Below are positions 34,004 to 46,600 of a stretch of DNA of 64,000 bases, piece after piece. The notes beneath the pieces are model-generated. The model did not search any database. It was not told the DNA's origin and was given only the letters and a program-made list of their open reading frames with translations. Origin of the DNA: Saccostrea echinata (Eukaryota); assembly GCF_033153115.1 (NCBI RefSeq), contig NW_026889751.1, positions 28,024,001 through 28,088,000 of the forward strand, in the 5' to 3' direction. The position numbers were made by a program, and so were the translations under genes. Position 1 is the stretch's first letter. Every line of letters starts with the position of its first letter.

Positions 34004-34920
34004 GCAGCACAGTTAAGGCTATAAAAAGGGGGCGGAGCCTAATTTGTATGGGAAGTATTAACTATGACATCAAACAAAACCAACAATTCTTTAAAATCCC
34101 ACAAAATGAAATGATCTGCTATTTCAAACAGAAGGAGACCATCAAACTATATCAAAACTTACTATGACACGCTGTTTTGTCGTAAGTTACCGGTAAATCC
34201 AACACAGCAAGGTATAAACATGTCACTGATCGCGATGCACCTGTCGATGTGACGTCATTTCGTAAAACTTGACGCAGTTTGTATGCAGTGAGAGGTGGAT
34301 CAAGTAATATTTTCACAACAAATAATGTATTCTATGATTAAATGAAATATCATTTACAGATATTTTAAGAGACCATTAACTTAGATGCAATGTCTTCTTT
34401 ATGATTTTATTCATATATTTTCCGTACATTTCCTTTTTAATTGATACTGCCGTATATTTGTATGCAAGTACATCGGAGGGTAATGTAAGGGTCTTAATAA
34501 ATCGATCTAGTGCAAGGGCATACACTCAATGAATCATAGTAAGCTTTTACAATTATACTCTAGAAGTATTAAGGTATCTGAAAAGTGCTGCAATCCTAAT
34601 GAAATCTTGAAAATGAAATATTAATATCTATATTTAATGCTTTAATGCCGTCGACCAGCAAAAAATACAACATGCAGTTTTTTGTAAACTAAACTGAATT
34701 TTAACTCTGATTAATGGTAAAAAATAAATTAACACAAATTGTCTTTGTCATGCCTGGTCTCATTTGTCTGTATTTGTTGTACGTCCAAGAGTCAGAGAGA
34801 AGGGGGTGTCAATGCATTAGAGTCAGTGTTTCTGTGTTATAGAATAGGACAAGACAGTGTTGTATTGAAGTCATTGCCAGACCGGAAAGAGGTTGTCAAT
34901 GCTAGTGTATTTAAAAGTGC

Positions 34921-34997
34921 AACACACACACACCCACACACACAAGCACACACACACACACACACGCACACACACAAACACACAGAGAGAGAGAGAT
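34921..34997 (+). repeat. (CA)n(GA)n compound microsatellite
   Basis: Direct reading; paralogous positions at 43570-43650 and 52595-52610 carry different lengths. Confidence 0.9.
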
Positions 34998-36728
34998 TGT
35001 TAACGTATGAGTCAGTGCTAATGGGTTTTAGAGCCCAAGATGTAGAGTAGGTTCCATTGCCATGGTATCCCTCTAAACAAACAGGGGAGACTATTGTATA
35101 ACGTCTGTTTCAGTGAATTTTGGTGTCCATGTTACCCAAATATTTCGACTTGGAGAATTTTGCTATATGTAGCAATATGAAATCAGCTATAGAAGTTTGC
35201 CAAAATTAGAGTGTCTCAGAATACTTTACAGGTAAAATATTCAAAAGGATGTGTTTGATATTCCACCCACTTCATTTTACTTCAGATTGGGATCTACATG
35301 TATACGTACTCCTGTTTATAAGTACACATTATGTAGCTGAAGAGACATGTTTTTAATGTTTCTGCTCGAGATTAAAAATTGCCTTCAGAATTTAGATTCT
35401 TACCAAAACTGTCTTTAGCATATGATATACCGTATGTGTGTGTGGCCTATTTTGTTTCTTTTAGCAGACGTAATGAAGAAAGGTAATTTTTGTGTTGTAT
35501 TTTCGATATTTAGACGATGCAATATCAGAATTTGTTGCATTTCAACAGTGAAATACTGTAAATAATTTATGGTATAAAAGTGATATTCTGTCACAGTGTG
35601 AAAGTACATCAAACTGATATTCTGTCAGAGTGTGACTGAATATCAGAAGTGCGACAAAACTCTATTTCCCTTCCCTTCACGAAGAATGTTTTTAAAAAAA
35701 CCTCCCTGGCGTGTTATAAGATGGAGAGAGTAAATAAACCACCCTGATAGAAACTAAAACCGCTAATGTTTCTCCAAATATGTTGTTGAAATCCATGTTA
35801 ACAATGTATTCAATCTCATCGCTAATCTATGACGTCTCAACTGCTCAACTATGATGTCACAGCCTATGACACCGTGTCAAAAAAAGACAGAGGCAAAGGG
35901 AAAAATCATAGAAAGTTTTCAAAAATTTTATCTTTGCTGATTACTTTTGATTGAGAAAAGATGGGCTTTCATATTTGACATGTTCATTATCTGTGACAAG
36001 GCGTTTCCGCGAATGCTATGCTTTTTTACCCCTTGACCTTGACCTAAATATTTGATCTAATTTCCAAAAAATTAATATTCCTGATTAATTTTGAATGACA
36101 TAAGATAGGGCGTTCATCTTAGGAAGTTTAAGTGTAGTTTTGATAAGCTATAATCTTTGCAATAACTGTTATTAATTCAATAATCTTTGTCTTTTTGTAT
36201 GTAACACAGACTAAGACAGGACACACAAACAAGACAGTTACAATATGCCAAAAATAATGACATCCCATCTACTAAGACACCGAAAGCGGGAGACCAAAAT
36301 TCTTTGAATTTGCTTGTACTGTATTTAAGCTAATTTGAATCTAAACGTCGGGAAAATGCATGATTAACAGTTTTAAAATTTTAGTCAAGATTTTTCCACA
36401 GTAAAATTATATAGAATTCACACCCAACTATAAAGCCCTATGTACTTGTACAATATTATGGATGATTTTGATTCACATACAAAGAAAAGTTTTAATCAAA
36501 AGTATTTCTTTTTCTTAATCTCGGTTGCTCATAGTGTTTAGAAGAGAGCATACAATACCATAACTCATCTTTTCACTCTTTTGCGTAAAAAATGGGGGGA
36601 GGATATGCTTATATTTATATGCAGATACACAAAGACTAAAAACTTTTATTTAAAAATAAATATTGTATTGTATACACAAATCCATTTCAAAAGTCTGCCA
36701 CCTTATATATAACAATGTAAAACAAAAA

Positions 36729-39700
36729 TTAAACACAATTACTTTTATCATTACAAAGTCTTTTTATATCACAAACAATTTTTAAACATAGTTTTTCTTG
36801 ATCACCGACTCCAAGGTACTCTAAAAATGATACCACAGAAAATTCAATTTTATTGTAAGATTCATTTCTCATATTTTGGGGAGTTCAAAATAAACGTTCA
36901 TTCAAACAGAAATTTCTGTGCTTCATGCTTTGGATCACGAAACATTATTTAAAAAAAATTATGATTATCTTATCTTTCAGCAAGTATTTCCAGATATATA
37001 ATTATCAGAATCATCCAGGCATATATTGTGCTGAATTGGTGTAGAAGACAATCTAAAGTGAAAATTTTTATAATATTTACATTTTGCATTGAAATTGATA
37101 GTTAATCAACTTGACTGTAATTTAGACCCTTCTTAAAGTCTGTTGAATGATTCCGGGGCCGAAATGTGTTATTGCATTTTATAGTCTATGGTTTTGAGTA
37201 CGAATTTTACCTATATCATCTTGTTCCTGTATTTCTCTTTGGTGAAGAATAAACTCGGGCCAAACTATTTTCTCAAAATATCCTGGCGCATCTGGGGGGA
37301 AATACTGTCGTCTTCTATTTTGAGAAAAACTTCAGTCTTCAATATTTTGATTTTATATAAATAAACATCTTAGAGTAAATAAATAAAGACTGAGAATAAA
37401 TCGGGTTCACCTGAGAGGTTTATGAAAAATACATTTGTACATGATGTATTTTGATACTTTTAATAAGTAATATATGTCCATTGCTTAAGATTTGATACTT
37501 TTAATAAGTAATATATGTCCATTGCTTTAGATTTGATAGTTTTTTAAGTAATATAATTATGTCCATTGCTTTAGATTTGATAGTTTTTATAAGTAATATA
37601 TGTCTATTGCTTTAGATTTGATAGTTTTTATAAGTACTATGTGTCCATTGCTTTGGATTTTTACCTCCTTCTGACTCTACACACTTCATATGGAATGGTA
37701 AAAAAGTATTTCTTCATGAAGAGCTGCTCCAATTCCCTATAAAAGAATGATATACACAAATGTTTAGAATCGTGCAATCATGGGGGGGAAGTGGGCTGTC
37801 GTTGAATGATCACTGACAAATCTCAAAAAAAAATTATTTGCCTATTTCAGAGCCATAAGGATCATAACAAAATTAATATTCCCAGCAATAATTACTGATA
37901 AGGAGAATAATAATCTTGCTCCTTTAAGAATACATTGTAGGTATTTTATTTTACCAATTCAAAACCAAGACATTTATCAGAAAGCTATTAGTAGTAGTAA
38001 AATTCAAACAGCATTACATAGTTTCAGAAATTATCACCATAGGCAAATATAAAACTAACTACATAACGGCATAAGTAGATCCGAAAAAACCTATACCCAA
38101 ACATTTAAGTAATCATTGACATTTGTCGGTGTAAATATACCGAGGTCCTTTATACCTCAAGGCATACATCCTGAATCCCTCGATAATTAGTACATTGCTA
38201 TACAGATCATTAGGGGTGGATACCGTTGGAGTGGAGTTACTTTGAGCATTTTTCCAGGACTGGACATCTGCTACCATTGCTTCCATGTTAAGGGCATTCA
38301 GTTCTAAAATATAAGCATTTCTTCAATCTTCTGTATCTTAAGAAATTCAGTGAAGTTCACATCTCTCTCTTTCCTATTACCTTTCTCTATATAATTTTCT
38401 TCGTTACTTTTAAAAATGTGCATTTATATTTGATATAGATAATGCTTTGGATCAGAGTCCCTTCAAGTCTTGACAGATGACTAAATTTATAGCTATAATC
38501 ATAGAGTGTACAAACCCTCAAAGTTGTAATTGTTTAGTTCTGGTATTGGGGTCAGGCGAGAATCCGAGGGGCTCTGTAAATCAGGGAGAAGAATGTTATA
38601 GAAAGCATAAATATAAATATCAGCATTTTTATGACAGGAATGGTCTATAAAAACAAAAATCATGCAGAGAACACATTCATATTTCAAAGTGCTTTATATC
38701 TAACTTATGCAACATGTTTTTTATAAACTTTTGTTATGAGGTAATTATATTTTATATGTTTCAAGCAAGCACATGTATTAATCGTATTGAGAAAAAGGCA
38801 TTACGTGCTTTGCACATGGTGCTTCATTGTCACCAAAAATGTTAGACGTTTATGTGTGGAACATAATTGTAGACTGTACATATCCCTGGAATCATAAAAA
38901 AATACCTTGTAGATTTTAAAATTTAACTGAAAGTTTTATGTTTTATTTTTATTTGGATTAAATTGTCCAGAGGACTGTCAAAAGGTGTCATTTGTCAAAC
39001 AAGCACTGGTGTGAAATGTTGGTTGTCTCTTAGGTAACATCTTTTAATATCTGACCTAGCAACCTGTTTCTCATAGAATAAAATCACATAGCCCTATCAG
39101 AGCTATAATTTAGTGAAAGTTGAATTCATACAACATTGGGATGCTTCATTATCGATACGATCAACATAGCCTTGTTGTTCTGGAGAAGATTTTTTTTCTG
39201 TGTAGAGGTATTATGTAAAATTATGTCCTGACTTCGGCCCAACCCTAACTCCAGGGTTCATAATTTTAAAAAAAAAAATGATTCCATATAACTTATGTAT
39301 GTTTTTTTTCTTTTTTATATGATTTAGTGTGGTCTTGCCACTCGTGAATAGATTTCTTCCTATATACTCTTTTGTAAAACTCTGATCACCTGTGTAGCCT
39401 CATCCTATTCCCAGGACCCTGATATGAACAATAATGACTTCGCGTCATAAAAGGAAGAGATTCTATAATTTTTTCTATATATTCTCGTGAAAAACTTTGA
39501 TCGTCCATTGTGGCACCATCCTACCCCCGGAGGTCATGATATGAACAAATTTAAATCTAAATTACCTGAGGGTGATTCCATATCAATATGACTAATCATG
39601 CCTTTGCTTTACTTTAGAAATTTGTGACGCCATTTTAATTTTTATACATTAGAAGATCTCTGTATCTTCTAACCTTTTCTGTCATGTAAAATAAACCACA

Positions 39701-42030
39701 TTCGTTTCATAGAGTTTTCATGATATTTATTTTTTATAATACAACTCAAAACATTTATTTTATAAAAATATATGGTTTAAATAATACGTAACAAATCTAC
39801 CATGCATTGTAGTCCAAACCTACTAGGAAATATGAGTCTTGACACATCGTACGACATCCCGGCAGATGAGCTCGGAGTCTGTTGGTCAGGGACGTCTTCC
39901 CACTATTTGTTACCCTGTAAAAGGAGGCATGGTCACTAATTGTGAAAAATTATTATAAATAACTCTTATTTGTGATTTTTGTCCACTCGTTATCCTGTAA
40001 AGGAAGTTGTGTTCACAGACTATGAATAATTATGAAATATGGAGATGCTCATAAGTCCATTCAAACTATACGAATCAGGAGAAGATCAAAAACGGATCTC
40101 AAAAAATCATCAGAGGTGGGGTCAGGGACCATGGGGAGTTAGCATCCCCTATCGACCGTTCACACCCGCTGTTTGCTCCTTGTCATGATCTGGTAAACGA
40201 AAAAATCCGTGTAAATAATGGCCTAACAATAAGTATGAAAAAAGTCAGTCAGCTTTAATATTTGACCTAATGATAGATGTATTTGTTAATAAGGTCATTG
40301 ATTCGACCATAGAACTTGCGAAATGATGACTTCAAACGAGACTGTTGATATCGTTGTTTCATCAACTTATTGGTTAATAGCTTGCCTCGTTTTAAAAATT
40401 GATCGTACAATGAGCATGCTCTTGCGTATCGAATCAACTGGGAGACATAAACCCCATATGCAGGTGATAAAAGTTTATTGCTACATAAGTAAGGGAAGTT
40501 GACAATAGGAAAGTTGAATTCATCACGTTTATCAAAAAAATCGTTATTGGTTTACTATTAACGTCCAAGTAAAATTCTAGTAAAATATCCAAATATAAAA
40601 CAGATGTGTCAGACTCTGTGATGTCTTTTATTTCAAGTTCACTGGGATATATTGAATTTACATTTTTAATTAAAAAATAATCGAAGAGCTAAAAAAGGCA
40701 GTGCCAAAGACTTGAGCCAAATACTTCGAAGGATCAGAGCTATGCATGAGGGAGATAATCCTTTATTTTTGAAATTTCTGAATTTTAGCAATTAAATATA
40801 TATCCGTATTTTCAAACTACATGTAGTACCGAAGTATTTATATGGATGGAAGTAACAATTAATTCTTAATTGGTAATGAGTCGTCGATATATATCTAAAT
40901 GTCGAGTTGAAGGCCACAGCGAGCGTTTTCTTCCTCTCATGATATACAATATATAACTATTATTTATGAAGGCTTTTTTTTATCGCTAATGGAAAATGCA
41001 TTTCAAATTTTCTTTTAAGGTACAATGAACAAACCAACATTATAGAGAAAAGGATCAGAAAAACTAAATAAATTGAATATGAAAAGATGATACATAAAGT
41101 TACAACATATATTGTCATATCAGTGTTAGCATTTATACACGGCATAGTGTGTATTAAACAAGTGTATGTTGTCTGAAACATTTCTATGACGTATTCAATG
41201 AAAAGAAAACAATTAAATATAAGTATATGCTTTTTGACATAGAGTCATGTAATGAATTTTTTCCGGGCATTAAAAAACTGAATACTGTATTTACAGCACT
41301 ATTATTGTCGACCTTTAATTTTGAATAAAAGCACATACTAATACTAGGATTCTCATAAACAAGATGTTGTTGTATTGAATGAACTTAAGAGATTCATTAA
41401 TTCAAAAGCTCTGCTAAACATAAAATTTATTTATTTAGTTTGAAATTACTATAATTTTTAAAGCCAAAATTATCTATATGTATATGATTATATAGATGTT
41501 AAAATACTACTTGTTCCAATCAGTTATGACTACAAGATACAGAAATATTAATTAAAGAATTGAAAACAGGTATCTAAATTATGTCACTAACAATAGAACA
41601 ATGAGGTTGACAAAAGGGACATGTAACAAAATTTGAAAAAATTGGCTAAAAATAAATCTTAGTGATTTTTAAAATTTCTTTTCAAGTTCATTTGCAATGA
41701 AACATAATACAATGTGTAATGTTTTCTAGAACATATTAACAATTGAATTTGATTACTTCTGACAAAAATGTCATGATAATAATACACATTTTTAACAGAT
41801 AATTACATAAATATGAATTTTATCACTTCTGACGTCAAAAAATACCATGATAATAAACATTCTCAACAGATAAGTACATTTAACACTTGTGTTCCCTTTA
41901 ACTTTATTGTGAAATACCCTCTTAATTTACTGGTTACTGGTTATATGTATGTTACACCACCAGTTTACATTGTACCTGACATTAAAACTCACCCAGATAT
42001 CCCAACGATAACAGGTGCCCTTCCGGTCAT
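36729..42030 (-). CDS. NMRK1: Nicotinamide riboside kinase (NRK/NMRK), 7 coding exons, 200 aa, open frame
   Basis: Exons (- strand) 42030-41993, 39914-39824, 38573-38516, 38303-38156, 37736-37665, 37314-37211, 36820-36729; all GT-AG with matching phases, 603 nt in total. Protein MTGRAPVIVGISGVTNSGKTSLTNRLRAHLPGCRTMCQDSYFLSPSDSRLTPIPELNNYNFEELNALNMEAMVADVQSWK...VLIIEGFRMYALRELEQLFMKKYFFTIPYEVCRVRRRRRQYFPPDAPGYFEKIVWPEF...EYLGVGDQEKLCLKIVCDIKRLCNDKSNCV*. It matches NMRK1 motifs GISGVTNSGKT, QD, LIIEGF, TIPYE.C..RR and PPD.PGYF..VWP. AATAAA at 36650-36645. Confidence 0.93.
37450..37660 (+). repeat. About 40-bp intronic minisatellite, about 5 copies
   Basis: TTTGATAGTTTTTATAAGTAATATATGTCCATTGCTTTAGA units filling much of NMRK intron 5. 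Confidence 0.85.
39090..39610 (+). mobile_element. Degenerate Helentron/HINE-type internal repeats in NMRK intron 2
   Basis: CCATCCTACCCC..GGTCATGATATGAACAA..AATCTA units similar to 61395-61620. Confidence 0.55.
40050..40620 (-). mobile_element. Penelope-like retroelement 3' fragment (RT thumb and 3' UTR) in NMRK intron 1
   Basis: Homologous to 56548-57160; encodes degenerate NFPYL.SN..LSPAYGVY.SQLIRYARAC. Confidence 0.75.
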
Positions 42031-42033
42031 GCT

Positions 42034-42258
42034 TCACTTATCTTTCTCCGTCTCTTCGCTCTCTTCCTCCCAACCTTCGTCATCCACCGGTTCAACCTGA
42101 GGAAGTTCTGGCGACGGGCCTGGTCCGTTTATCCGGTCGAGAAATTCGCCCAGTAAGCTCTTATTTAAATGGTCAGTCTGTGTTATTTCCCTTTCCTCCA
42201 CTTCTTCATTTGCTGGTTGACCGTCTGTTGCTTCATTGCTTAATTAATGTCGCTCCAT
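42034..42258 (-). other. Upstream ORF in frame with NMRK, encoding a small acidic protein with a TQTDHLNKSLLGEFL motif; internal TAA at codon 5
   Basis: MERH*LSNEATDGQPANEEVEEREITQTDHLNKSLLGEFLDRINGPGPSPELPQVEPVDDEGWEEESEETEKDK*, then S-M(NMRK). GC-richer than flanks; no intron separates it from the NMRK ATG. Confidence 0.7.
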
Positions 42259-43270
42259 GTAATTGATTTTGCACGTCTTTAAAAATCTCAGAAAAGTATC
42301 CAGAACCTCTTAGAAAAAAAATGTCACAAACTTACTGTACGAATAGAAAATTGTATCGTTGTTGGATAAATATAATCTTATCTAATGTATTACATCAATT
42401 CTTCTCACAGCAGTAAAATATGAGAAATGTTGTATTAAAAGCAGTTACCAGTATAGTGCTAATGAAATGAAAATTTGTAATATCTCATTGTCACGAAAAG
42501 TATAGTGAATTACGTTAAAAAATTCTGTTGTCATGAATCCCTTTAACCTATTATGATTTTCTTATTTAAATTATATAATTCTTTGTTAAAAAAATATATT
42601 GGTTTGTAAGAAAAATATGCATTTTCTGTCTTCTACAAATTCAGAAGATAAATAATTCCAGTATAGTCTATGGAATCCAAAATTTCCACTTTCTTATGAA
42701 CTACGTTATCATATCTGTCTGCCTTGAATACAGCAGCTATATGGAATGCAAATCATTGAATCGAAACTATCAATGAGCTCATTAATTCATAATTAATTTA
42801 TCATAACGATTTCAGAATGCTGTCACTTTTTTTAAAGTGCCAAATAATCATCTTTTTTGTGAAATACAGTGATTTATGTTACATTTGATTCATATTATAT
42901 CTCCAGGGCAGAATTTCATTGTTTGCGATTAATATTTAATAACTTCTTTCATCCATTTTTTTTCATCTGACAAGAGTTGATATAAAGAAACCTACCGAAA
43001 ATATTCTCATCATTATGAGGTATGAAATACAGTGGGCGTTTTTTTTCATGGTCATTGGCACAATTTACTAAAAACTGAATTTGGGCTATAAGGTTTAGGA
43101 GAAATTAGTGAAAAACTGTATAATTCATTATTTTTGACCAAGTCAGTGAGAAGGGTACAGTATGAATATTGGATGTTGAATGAGCTCGAGTGAGTGAGGA
43201 GTACATGGCCGTAGGAACGGGAGGGGGTGCCCCTCCCCCAATAATTTTGCCGATATATAGAATACTATAG

Positions 43271-43416: not shown

Positions 43417-43591
43417 TAACTGTATGTCTAAGAGTCAGAAAGAGAAGGGTTGTTGATGCAGGAGAGTCACTGGTTGTGTATTATAAAATCCAACACAGTT
43501 GATAAATGTTGTATTGAAGTCATTGCCAGACCCGAAAGAAATTGTCAATAAAATTAAATTTAAGAGTGCAACACACACACCCTCTCTCTCA

Positions 43592-43650
<59 letters not shown>

Positions 43651-46600
43651 GGTTCACGTATGAGTCTTTGCTATTGGATTTCAGAGCCAAATATAGAGAA
43701 CAGGTCTTGTAATGTTCTCATTACCATGGTATTCCTCTTGACAAACAGCTAGAGAAGATTATTGTTTAATGTCCAATTTCAGTGCATTTCGGTGTCCATT
43801 CATCCTAAGCATATATCTGACTAAGCGAAAATTGCTTTGTTGTAAGTACTATAAAATAAACCATAAAAGTTTGCCAAGATTATAGTGTGTCAAACACCTT
43901 ACATGTCCATATATCCATCTTTTGTCTTACTCAAAGAAGCATATTCAATATGTCAAAGAGCCTTTTCCTTTAAAAAAATAGCAGCAAAATAAGGCAAACT
44001 AAGAACTTAGTTTGGAAGAGAGCGCTATCTTACAATTTTAATAATTTTAATCAGAGGAAAAGTTTAACTAAACTCCGCATTTCTGCATTTAAATATTTTA
44101 ATTAATATTTAAATACTGTAAAGAGGAGATATACCGGCCTTCCCGCTGATTTAAGAGTAGGCTCTTAAATTGATATGCAGGAGGTTAAAGGTGAATATAT
44201 ATATATTTTTTTTTTGGTCCAAAATATAACAATGAAAGGTAACAATTAATGGAAACCTTTTCAAAAATTAATTTTCTCTTTTTAAACACCTGCTTAAAAA
44301 CTATAAGATTTAAATAATGAAAGAAAAGAAGTTACCTGTTTACTTACAGTAAAAGTACAAATTTATAAATACTTGTACATGTATTACTATGCACATGCAT
44401 GTTTTGGGAATTTATTTTTGAAATATAAAAGAACATTCAAATGTTTAAATACATATACATGTATTAACATTTACTATACATTATATTGCATGATTTACTT
44501 TCAACTGATCATGAACATAAGACATAAATAATGTATCTTGGTTATAACTATATACATTGTACAAATATGCATTATTACTGTTTTCCGTTGTAATAATGTT
44601 TAAATTGTAATTTCATTTGTCACAATGCCTTCCGGGGCCTTTGATTGGCCAATAAAATTTTGTGCACATATTCGAAAGGATGTGTTTGATATCCCACCCA
44701 CTTCATTTTACTTCAGAGAGAACTACGTGTTTTTGTGTTATAAGTGCATATTATGTGGTAGAAGAGACTTGATTTTATGTTTCTACTCGAGATCATGTCT
44801 TTACGACTTTGCGTTTAGCGCGCGTGTAGAAAAACAATTCTGAAGCAAGAGAAGAAAGATAACTCTTACAAGTATCATATTTAAGACACTGAGACGATGA
44901 AATATTAGAACATTTCGGTTTCCATGAGAGTGGGCATTATACAAGTTTCTTAACTTCCTTACATAAAGTATAATTTTGTAAATCTGGAAAAGTTCTAAAT
45001 AGATTCCTATCTTACCCTCAGTAATTTACTCTGACATGCATTGGAAAGAAGGTACAGATTACAAAAAAGAAATATCGGCACTACAGTTTCCGACATATTT
45101 CTATGTTAAACTAACCTCTGACTTAAGGATATATTTTTGCTAATTTAACTACATATCAAGAAGGAGCTTGCATATATAATCAAAGTACTGAAAGTACTGA
45201 TACGAGTTGATGGTTGTCCAAGCTTAGCTAATGTATTGCTTTTGTGATGAAAAATTGAAATGTCTGTTTAGAAACAGAAATTTAAATTTTCATTTGATTT
45301 CTTATGAATTTCATGACATGATGTAATGTATTTTAAAATCCATTTAACAAATAATACTTTGTGATATTATAAGAAAAAAAAATTCTTTCTTTTTACAGTA
45401 TAATTATACGATTTATACATTTATTAAGCATTGCTGCCTTATCTTAACAAATGAAATGCACTTGCACAACTATCATAAAGTGTATTAAAACCAGACTTTT
45501 TGACATTCCTTAGTGTGCATGCAGCAAGTATTCCTTTTACATTTGTTATGATCAATTACTAGTATTATACCTTGTATAAAAATGTAGATTTTTAAAACAC
45601 TATTCTGGTCTTCCAGTTTGAAGTGTAGTAAGCCAATAAAGAGTATACGAGAATGAATTTTTAGAAAGTCATTGTCAAATTTTTTTTTGTCCGTAAATAT
45701 TTCATAATTGACACAAGTATTTCAAATATACATGTAGAAAGCAAAAACAAAAATGTAATCTTAATACAAGAAGTTTTATACAGCATCCAGATTTCAGATT
45801 TACAAATAAATGCTACACTTATGAAAGTAATGATACAATCATGAAACACAGGGTCAAACTAATGTAATCAACACAACTGTTGCAGATTTTAAAGTCCTGT
45901 AACATTGACACATTATGAGAGTCATTTTCTTGCAAAAGAAGATATTCAATTAATTTTTACCAAAGAATATTTATATAAGGGAAAAGTCCTTATTTTAAAG
46001 ATGGACATTCTTCACTTCACATTTGAAATCAAGGGGTGGTTGTCCTCCAACATACAAAACACTGACAGCTGAATTCTTCAATACATCTATGTTTGAAATT
46101 CCAGTACTTCAGCAAAAGGTTTATACATATCTTCCCAGGCACAAAGCAATGACCATCTCTTTTGCACTGTCATTTGTGGTTTATGCTTCTACAAAAGTAA
46201 AATCAAGGGTCTGAGAGGCACATAGCATTGTATATATTTACATATAGTAAATATTTGATTGAATTTAATTTTCTCAATTTCCAGGATTTTTGGAATTCCC
46301 TCTTGTTTAGAAATTTCAGAAATGTTTCTATTTTTCTATGCTTTACTCACATTTAAAAACTAGACAAAATACAATTATTTAGCTCATAAAATAAATTCTC
46401 AATTTCTCAGCCAATTTCTGGACAAAACTTGTCAACATTTAATTGTCGGCAATTTTTTAACAAAGCCTCTTTTTTTCAAGTAAGCATTTTGCATTGACAA
46501 ATATTAATTAATTTACTTTAAAATGTATACAAAGTTTCTACTCATTTTAAATCATTTGTTACCAGAAGATTATGTATGCATAAAATAATTGTTTTACCCA

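What the first reader, a model, noticed from the sequence alone, without database searches (positions are those of the whole stretch)
41993..42258. Candidate bicistronic locus: a small acidic protein ORF ends 3 nt before, and in frame with, the NMRK start codon
Seen: on the - strand the NMRK first coding exon continues upstream without an intron into a GC-richer, codon-like stretch reading MERH*LSNEATDGQPANEEVEEREITQTDHLNKSLLGEFLDRINGPGPSPELPQVEPVDDEGWEEESEETEKDK*, followed by AGC and the NMRK ATG (TGA 42036-42034, ATG 42030). The core TQTDxLNxxLLxxFL helix between acidic tails resembles, from memory only, a small conserved eukaryotic protein family of unknown function (DUF5315-like). Inference: one mRNA encodes both a microprotein and an NAD+-salvage kinase, by leaky scanning, reinitiation or readthrough. 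TGA-A is not the classic leaky TGA-C context, so readthrough is the least likely route. The ORF track missed it because no start codon follows the internal stop.
Basis: partly seen in the sequence, partly recalled or inferred. Interest (0 to 1): 0.9.

Follow-up and report, generated by a model that had tools for sequence, protein, structure and literature searches.

The report
Decayed microprotein cistron before NMRK
The acidic reading frame just before the NMRK start codon is a truncated, frameshifted remnant of a conserved, unannotated ~95-residue microprotein that several invertebrate lineages encode on the same mRNA as this NAD-salvage kinase; an intact copy lies 37 kb upstream in the same genome.

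Summary

The 69 codons are real coding sequence. They belong to a large microprotein family (249 clusters) with a near-invariant core, REITQTDHLNKRLLxSFLxRLN. The family has no Pfam model, no solved structure and no paper that I could find.

This small ORF ends 3 to 179 nt before the NMRK start codon in this genome's two tandem NMRK copies and in five unrelated metagenome contigs. Two of those contigs are spliced mRNAs. In Mytilus the same module is annotated as fused to NMRK. In corals it stands alone. In a choanoflagellate it sits inside CDC123.

The window copy is broken:
- It lacks the first ~14 codons and the ATG. An interspersed repeat abuts the break.
- A 4-nt insertion creates the TAA.
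- All polarisable amino-acid changes are derived in this copy.
- No RNA contig identical to the window covers it.

The paralog at G000:C2:28102847-28103125 keeps an intact 93-codon ORF with the same TGA-AGC-ATG junction. The spliced RNA contigs match the paralog, so it is the working bicistronic gene.

AUG depletion between the two start codons (6 observed, 14.1 expected, P 0.0014) favours leaky scanning. An LC8-binding role for the TQT motif got only weak support. The DUF5315 resemblance is not supported.

The parts
42037..42243 (-). Remnant of the microprotein ORF: 69 codons, equal to codons 25-93 of the intact 93-codon paralog. The conserved core ITQTDHLNK.LL..FL.RIN is present.
42245..42283 (-). 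Frame-shifted remnant of codons ~13-25 (reads FKDVQNQLHGATL in the +1 frame). Homology with the paralog stops at about 42283.
42241..42248 (-). Site of the 4-nt insertion relative to the paralog. Its exact placement is ambiguous within a TTAA-type duplication. It shifts the frame and creates the TAA at 42246-42244.
   Evidence: the 4 gaps in the RNA contigs
42244..42258 (-). ATG plus 3 codons plus TAA (MERH*). This ATG is an ancestral out-of-frame ATG, not the microprotein start.
42183..42236 (-). 17-codon AUG-started uORF in another frame. It is also present in the paralog, where it is 8 codons long and starts at the ATG that corresponds to the internal ATG of this window uORF.
42034..42036 (-). 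TGA stop of the microprotein ORF, followed by the 3-nt spacer AGC (42033-42031).
41993..42030 (-). NMRK coding exon 1 (MTGRAPVIVGISG); GT donor at 41992-41991.
   Evidence: (joint 39913 to 41992 in four runs)
36729..39914 (-). NMRK exons 2-7: 39914-39824, 38573-38516, 38303-38156, 37736-37665, 37314-37211, 36820-36729.
42289..43100 (.). Interspersed repeat (at least 48 genomic copies, 67-82% identical) that abuts the truncation point of the ORF.

Best explanation
The window holds the downstream copy of a tandemly duplicated NMRK gene. The ancestral gene is dicistronic. One exon carries a ~93-codon ORF for a disordered acidic microprotein with a single conserved helix, a stop codon, a 3-nt spacer and the NMRK start codon.

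In the window copy the 5' cistron is a relic. Its promoter-proximal part, with the ATG and about 14 codons, is gone, and a dispersed repeat sits at the break. A 4-nt insertion shifts the frame. The remaining 69 codons are drifting. The NMRK part of this copy is intact and expressed. The paralog 36.9 kb upstream keeps the full arrangement and produces a spliced mRNA that contains both ORFs.

Inferred, not shown: in the intact gene most ribosomes start at the first AUG and make the microprotein. A fraction scans past it, through an AUG-poor stretch of about 300 nt, and starts at the NMRK AUG (leaky scanning). The microprotein acts with NMRK as a protein-interaction module.
For: - There are only two copies in the genome. 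The paralog has an intact 93-aa ORF starting at GACATGG, then TGA-AGC-ATG and a GTGAGT donor.
- The whole gene is duplicated. Introns are 68-76% identical and the ORF region is 93-95% identical. Homology ends at window 42283.
- The paralog's 5 kb upstream has no match anywhere in the window. A repeat abuts the break.
- Spliced contigs of 936 and 942 nt join NMRK exons 4-3-2-1 to the whole small ORF. They differ from the window by 14 letters and 4 gaps in exon 1, and by 14 letters in exon 4. These are exactly the paralog's differences.
- Four of the five amino-acid differences are clearly derived in the window copy (outgroups P0001, P0003, P0171, P0172). One is a Glu at a position that is S or A in 150 of 155 family motifs and never E.
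- The family is real: 249 clusters at E<=1e-3.
- The small ORF lies directly 5' of the NMRK start in L009, L010, L012, L016 and L022. It is fused to NMRK in Mytilus annotation.
- Out-of-frame AUGs between the two starts number 6 against 14.1 expected with the protein held fixed (P 0.0014). No linked small ORF has an internal Met.
Against: - The 69 codons still show pN/pS of 0.22 against the paralog. That is lower than the NMRK exons at 0.41. The loss is therefore recent, or the stretch keeps some constraint, or gene conversion has homogenised it.
- One 1,559-nt contig in run X2 runs collinearly from 42020 into the repeat. It may be a transcript of an allele or ortholog of this copy that includes the relic.
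- The 4-nt insertion could not be checked against DNA reads.
- The first AUGs are in strong Kozak context, which limits leaky scanning. Short spacers (3, 4, 13 nt) would also fit termination-reinitiation.
- No translation data were available.
Confidence: 0.8

Rival explanations
1. The window copy is still a working bicistronic locus. The 69-codon frame would be translated from a non-AUG start (for example the GTG at 42204 in a G..GTGG context) or after splicing from an unseen upstream exon.
For: The core motif is intact, pN/pS is 0.22 and the TGA-AGC-ATG junction is retained. The GTG-started 55-aa ORF exists.
Against: All three frames are closed between 42276 and 42230, so no upstream exon can feed the frame through the observed exon. 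Four of the five nonsynonymous changes are clearly derived here, one of them at a near-invariant position. No window-identical RNA contig lies over 42032-42279.
Confidence: 0.1
2. In the intact gene the TGA is read through, so the small ORF is really an optional N-terminal extension of NMRK. The product would be a fusion like Mytilus isoform X1.
For: The stop and the NMRK ATG are in frame in both paralogs. A close relative's protein, P0264, reads K-W-D-MTGKPP..GISG, which is a sense codon at the stop position. Four Mytilus species are annotated with the fusion.
Against: The context is UGA-A, not the leaky UGA-C or CUAG context. In five other lineages the spacer is 4 to 179 nt and out of frame, so the conserved feature is proximity and not frame. 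Hundreds of contigs of the close relative encode the 93-aa stop-terminated form.
Confidence: 0.12
3. NMRK is translated from the dicistronic mRNA by termination-reinitiation, or only from separate monocistronic transcripts made by alternative promoters or first exons. Leaky scanning would play no part.
For: The spacers are very short: 3, 4 and 13 nt. Mytilus has alternative first exons, isoforms X2 and X3. In the two runs that express both paralogs, contigs break exactly at 42031/42032, one base before the NMRK ATG.
Against: Reinitiation after ~95 codons is usually inefficient (general knowledge of eukaryotic translation). AUG depletion (P 0.0014) is not expected if scanning through the ORF is irrelevant. 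The sequence before 42032 is purine-rich and makes a poor splice acceptor.
Confidence: 0.3
4. The open stretch is a chance feature of a GC-rich non-coding 5' leader.
For: There is no ATG and no Pfam hit.
Against: Hundreds of homologs carry a near-invariant 20-residue core.
Confidence: 0.01

Closest known systems
Conserved dicistronic animal mRNAs with an upstream microprotein ORF (for example MIEF1 uORF protein, ASNSD1 uORF/ASDURF, SNURF-SNRPN, MOCS2A/B, RPP14-HTD2; from my own knowledge)
   Same: Two conserved, separately terminated ORFs lie on one spliced mRNA. The 5' ORF encodes a protein of about 100 residues. The region upstream of the main start is AUG-poor.
   Different: The partner enzyme (NMRK) and the microprotein family are new, and the spacer is only 3 nt here. 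The same module also occurs fused (Mytilus), stand-alone (corals) and inserted in CDC123 (a choanoflagellate). No paper linking NMRK to a uORF or a bicistronic mRNA was found.
Mytilus 'nicotinamide riboside kinase 1-like isoform X1' (XP_076105253.1 and orthologs in M. edulis, M. trossulus, M. coruscus)
   Same: The same motif module lies N-terminal to the same kinase.
   Different: In Mytilus the module is annotated as one 279-280-aa ORF made through an alternative first exon. Here a stop codon separates the two. I could not check the Mytilus models against RNA.
LC8 (DYNLL) partners with a TQT anchor motif
   Same: A TQT triplet sits in a disordered acidic chain, next to a helix that could self-associate. 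This genome's own LC8 docks with ipSAE 0.41 against a best control of 0.02.
   Different: The verdict was only 'weak support', and it may reflect memory of solved LC8 complexes. 22 of 155 motifs have TLT or SLT. The strongest conservation lies after the TQT (DHLNK.LL.SFL.RLN), which LC8 binding does not explain.
CDC123 / D123 (PF07065) of the choanoflagellate Stephanoeca diplocostata
   Same: It carries the same helix motif twice, as TLTD[HR]LN..LLTSFLER.N.
   Different: There the motif is an insertion in a loop of an ATP-grasp protein, not a separate microprotein and not linked to NMRK.

Membership tests
Dicistronic mRNA (upstream microprotein ORF plus main ORF) | Both ORFs lie on one mature, spliced mRNA | tested here: met
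   Met for the paralog (spliced contigs X3 rec17 and X4 rec24) and for L009 and L022. For the window copy itself this is inconclusive, because no window-identical contig covers the ORF.
Dicistronic mRNA (upstream microprotein ORF plus main ORF) | The upstream ORF has a start codon and an unbroken frame | tested here: not met
   The window copy has no ATG, carries a 4-nt insertion and is truncated at 42283. The paralog meets the feature.
Dicistronic mRNA (upstream microprotein ORF plus main ORF) | The upstream ORF is conserved as protein | tested here: met
   249 clusters at E<=1e-3, a near-invariant core, and pN/pS of 0.22 between the paralogs.
Dicistronic mRNA (upstream microprotein ORF plus main ORF) | Both ORFs are translated | not testable with these tools
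   No Ribo-seq or proteomics data were at hand.
   No Pfam-A family at E up to 10 for the window peptide or for 11 family members.
LC8-binding TQT-motif proteins | A TQT anchor in a disordered segment | tested here: met
   TQT occurs in 120 of 155 distinct motifs. The chain is disordered apart from helix 46-63.
LC8-binding TQT-motif proteins | The motif docks on the LC8 dimer | tested here: inconclusive
   Complex prediction scored 0.41 (runs 0.43, 0.41, 0.07) against a best control of 0.02. Partner pLDDT was 41-46 and contact agreement at least 84%. The tool's verdict was 'weak support'. At a score of 0.60 or under, only 5 of 78 solved complexes reached the mark, while all 4 passing mismatches fell in that range.
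Nicotinamide riboside kinase (downstream cistron) | A P-loop and NMRK-like exons with open frames | tested here: met
   The P-loop GISG|VTNSGKT is split over exons 1 and 2. There are seven open exons. Relatives score on PF13238 and PF00485 and are 36-40% identical to Mytilus NMRK.
Programmed stop-codon readthrough | A leaky stop context and in-frame continuation conserved across lineages | tested here: not met
   The context is UGA-A. The spacers in other lineages are out of frame. The arrangement is in frame only in this clade.

The most novel reading that the evidence does not exclude
The microprotein is an unrecognised, ancient partner of nicotinamide riboside kinase. It is a disordered acidic chain whose invariant TQTDHLNK.LL.SFL.RLN helix recruits a conserved factor, possibly the LC8 dimerisation hub, to NMRK. 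It is held in fixed stoichiometric coupling with the kinase by being translated from the same mRNA through leaky scanning. In some lineages it is fused to the kinase or joined to it by UGA readthrough. If so, NAD+ salvage in many invertebrates would have a second, unannotated subunit.
Probability: 0.3. Interest if true: 0.8.

Novelty: new member of a known kind. Interest (0 to 1): 0.6.

Why it matters
A protein family with a 20-residue core nearly unchanged from corals to molluscs, and recognisable in a choanoflagellate, has escaped annotation. Gene callers pick only the kinase on the shared mRNA.

The family's repeated physical linkage to NMRK takes three forms: same exon, 3 to 179 nt apart; fused in mussels; a sense codon at the stop in one relative. 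This is a Rosetta-stone type argument that the two proteins work together in NAD+ salvage.

The tandem pair in this genome is a natural experiment. One NMRK copy has the microprotein cistron and one has lost it. The pair could be used to test how the upstream ORF tunes kinase translation.

For annotation, the window copy should be labelled as NMRK with a decayed leader ORF, not as a bicistronic gene.

Tried and rejected
- Pfam on the peptide and on family members found nothing. A DUF3245 hit at 28.3 bits appeared only for a triple-repeat protein and I took it as spurious.
- The PDB sequence search gave only a chance hit at E 1.7.
- The ESM Atlas gave only unrelated bacterial clusters scoring under 0.8.
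- Literature searches for NMRK with bicistronic, uORF or upstream ORF, and for the motif string, found nothing relevant.
The DNA behind P0001, P0002, P0257-P0264 and the Mytilus models could therefore not be read.
- The look-up of sequencing runs found no run holding the window sequence itself, only runs with small shares.
- An N-terminal extension from an upstream exon is rejected, because all three frames are closed upstream of the 69 codons.
- A simple repeat insertion with the lost 5' part displaced nearby is rejected, because the paralog's 5' part has no match in the window.
- I checked CRM1 export signal, eIF4E-binding and nuclear-receptor-box patterns by eye. None fits the conserved spacing.
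- LC8 docking (complex prediction) gave weak support only and is not counted as evidence of binding.
- I never joined the NMRK exons into one protein for any search. They were analysed exon by exon, so the joined-model step was left out.

Full report
**1. Observation**

The minus strand reads exactly as reported. There is an ATG at 42258, then three codons and a TAA at 42246-42244. Then come 69 open codons at 42243-42037, a TGA at 42036-42034, AGC, and the NMRK ATG at 42030. The splice donor follows 41993. GC content peaks at 0.51 over the stretch, against about 0.25 in the flanks.

The NMRK gene downstream is intact, with seven exons from 42030 to 36729. This agrees with the scan's other note on this window.

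**2. The stretch is real coding sequence of a large, unannotated family**

- A word-indexed search found two intact AUG-started relatives, of 96 and 107 aa.
- A profile search of 1.8 billion representatives found 249 clusters at E<=1e-3. Most are 70-125 aa. A second indexed search found 327 proteins.
- Nearly all start with MAD or ME. They are acidic and low in complexity.
- They share a core that is almost invariant. In 155 distinct instances, D, N, L and F are fixed at four positions, TQT occurs in 120, and the small-residue position is S or A in 150.
- AlphaFold2 with a 20-sequence alignment predicts a disordered chain with one confident helix at residues 46-63, pLDDT about 85.
- No Pfam family, no solved structure and no paper matches.
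- The few named members are 'hypothetical protein' entries from a sea slug and from corals.

**3. The window copy is a relic and the intact gene is its tandem paralog**

The genome holds exactly two copies. The second copy is at G000:C2:28102847-28103125, on the same strand, 36.9 kb upstream and outside the window.

The paralog has an unbroken 93-codon ORF that starts at an ATG in a GACATGG context. It is followed by the same TGA-AGC-ATG junction, NMRK exon 1 and a GTGAGT donor.

The whole NMRK gene is duplicated. Introns are 68-76% identical, NMRK exons about 90%, and the small ORF 95%.

Homology between the copies stops at window 42283. The paralog's 5 kb upstream, which holds the ATG and the first 14 codons, has no match anywhere in the 64-kb window. 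A dispersed repeat with at least 48 genomic copies ends within about 6 nt of the break.

Downstream of the break the window reads FKDVQNQLHGATL in the +1 frame. This matches codons 13-25 of the paralog. A 4-nt insertion then shifts the frame and makes the TAA.

Five amino-acid differences separate the 69 codons from the paralog. Using four outgroup proteins, four of them are clearly derived in the window copy. One is a Glu at the S/A position of the helix, a residue seen in none of the 155 motifs.

Even so, pN/pS over the 69 codons is 0.22, with pS 0.142 and pN 0.031. The NMRK exons give 0.41. The decay is therefore recent, or it is damped by gene conversion or by some residual constraint.

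**4. RNA evidence**

No public run holds the window sequence itself. Four runs of related material held spliced contigs.

Contigs of 936 and 942 nt join 38156-38304, 38518-38571, 39827-39913 and 41992-42279. They continue 32-38 nt further.

Their differences from the window are 14 letters plus 4 gaps in exon 1 and 14 letters in exon 4. These are exactly the paralog's differences. These contigs therefore show the paralog's mRNA, with both ORFs on one spliced molecule.

A second form, nearly identical to the window in exons 2-4, is expressed in two of the runs. However, no window-identical contig covers 42032-42279, and in those two runs the contigs break at 42031/42032.

One 1,559-nt contig runs collinearly from 42020 into the repeat. 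It may be an allele or ortholog of the window copy, or unspliced material.

Contigs cannot prove absence. The 5' end of the window copy's mRNA stays open.

**5. The linkage with NMRK is conserved**

Fourteen metagenome contigs encode relatives. In five of them the small ORF is followed in the same exon or mRNA by an NMRK start of the form M..[IV][IV]G[IL]SG:

| Contig | Spacer | Type |
|---|---|---|
| L022 | 4 nt | spliced mRNA |
| L012 | 13 nt | genomic, GT donor after GLSG |
| L016 | 32 nt | genomic |
| L009 | 91 nt | spliced mRNA |
| L010 | 179 nt | genomic |

The downstream ORFs of L009 and L022 are NMRK: 36-40% identical to Mytilus NMRK, E 1e-39 to 2e-47, with PF13238 and PF00485 hits.

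Other arrangements of the module:
- Four Mytilus species are annotated with an isoform in which the module is the N-terminus of NMRK.
- A close relative of this genome's protein is seen on hundreds of transcriptome contigs as a 93-aa protein. In three contigs it appears as a 108-aa form that reads through a Trp codon into MTGKPP..GISG.
- Eight coral-type contigs carry the ORF alone.
- A choanoflagellate CDC123 carries the motif twice.

**6. Mechanism**

Shown: there are two ORFs on one mRNA, and the arrangement is conserved.

Inferred: how NMRK gets translated. Across five linked loci the region between the two start codons holds 6 ATGs. Mononucleotide shuffles expect 27, and shuffles that keep the protein sequence fixed expect 14.1 (P 0.0014). 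None of the linked small ORFs has an internal Met.

This is the signature of leaky scanning. The residual ATGs in the paralog open uORFs of 4 and 8 codons.

The very short spacers would also suit termination-reinitiation. Alternative first exons, as annotated in Mytilus, may give monocistronic mRNAs as well.

Readthrough is possible only in this clade, since frame is not conserved elsewhere.

**7. What the microprotein does is unknown**

Its fusion to NMRK in some lineages argues that the two act together.

The TQT triplet suggested binding to the LC8 dynein light chain. I tested this with this genome's own intronless LC8. The score was 0.41 against a best control of 0.02. Partner pLDDT was 41-46 and the runs agreed in at least 84% of contacts. 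The tool's verdict was 'weak support', a range in which passes are more often wrong than right.

TLT variants, and the stronger conservation of the helix after the TQT, argue that LC8 cannot be the whole story.

**8. Limits**

- The NMRK exons were never joined for a search.

**9. Verdict**

The bicistronic idea holds for the gene family and for the paralog, but this copy is a decayed remnant.

The lasting result is a new, highly conserved microprotein family tied to NMRK.

Noticed in passing
G000:C2:28102847-28103125 (locus L001:1498-1779, minus strand), outside the window: An intact 93-codon microprotein ORF followed by TGA-AGC-ATG of a second, complete NMRK gene. This is the working dicistronic copy, and its spliced mRNA is seen in four runs.
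   Followed up: yes
window 39407-39607 and 40211-40612 (NMRK intron 1): Very high contig depth in the RNA runs (up to about 10,000), with many divergent contigs, loose ends and strand-switch joints. These look like expressed interspersed repeats inside the intron.
   Followed up: no
window 43438-43653 and 34840-35109, minus strand: Two similar elements with GA/CA microsatellite cores lie upstream and downstream of the NMRK copy. A third lies downstream of the paralog (28093003-28093659), at 67-70% identity.
   Followed up: partly
window 42031/42032: In the two runs that express both paralogs, contigs end or begin so that a branch point falls exactly one base before the NMRK ATG. This could be an alternative 5' exon junction or a graph artefact. 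It is unexplained.
   Followed up: partly
proteins P0004 (215 aa), P0006 (Elysia marginata, 145 aa), P0188: Some family members carry the whole motif module two or three times in tandem.
   Followed up: no
P0009 and P0088 (D123/CDC123 proteins; P0009 from Stephanoeca diplocostata): The same helix motif is inserted in a loop near the C-terminus of CDC123, twice in P0009. This points to a portable interaction module older than animals.
   Followed up: partly
G000:C54:21418185-21418436 (L007:1498-1764, minus strand): An intronless, canonical 89-aa LC8 dynein light chain gene. A second partial match is on C37.
   Followed up: no
L012:3573-4181, minus strand: In one metagenome contig a CCDC124-like gene lies head to head with the microprotein-NMRK gene.
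   Followed up: no
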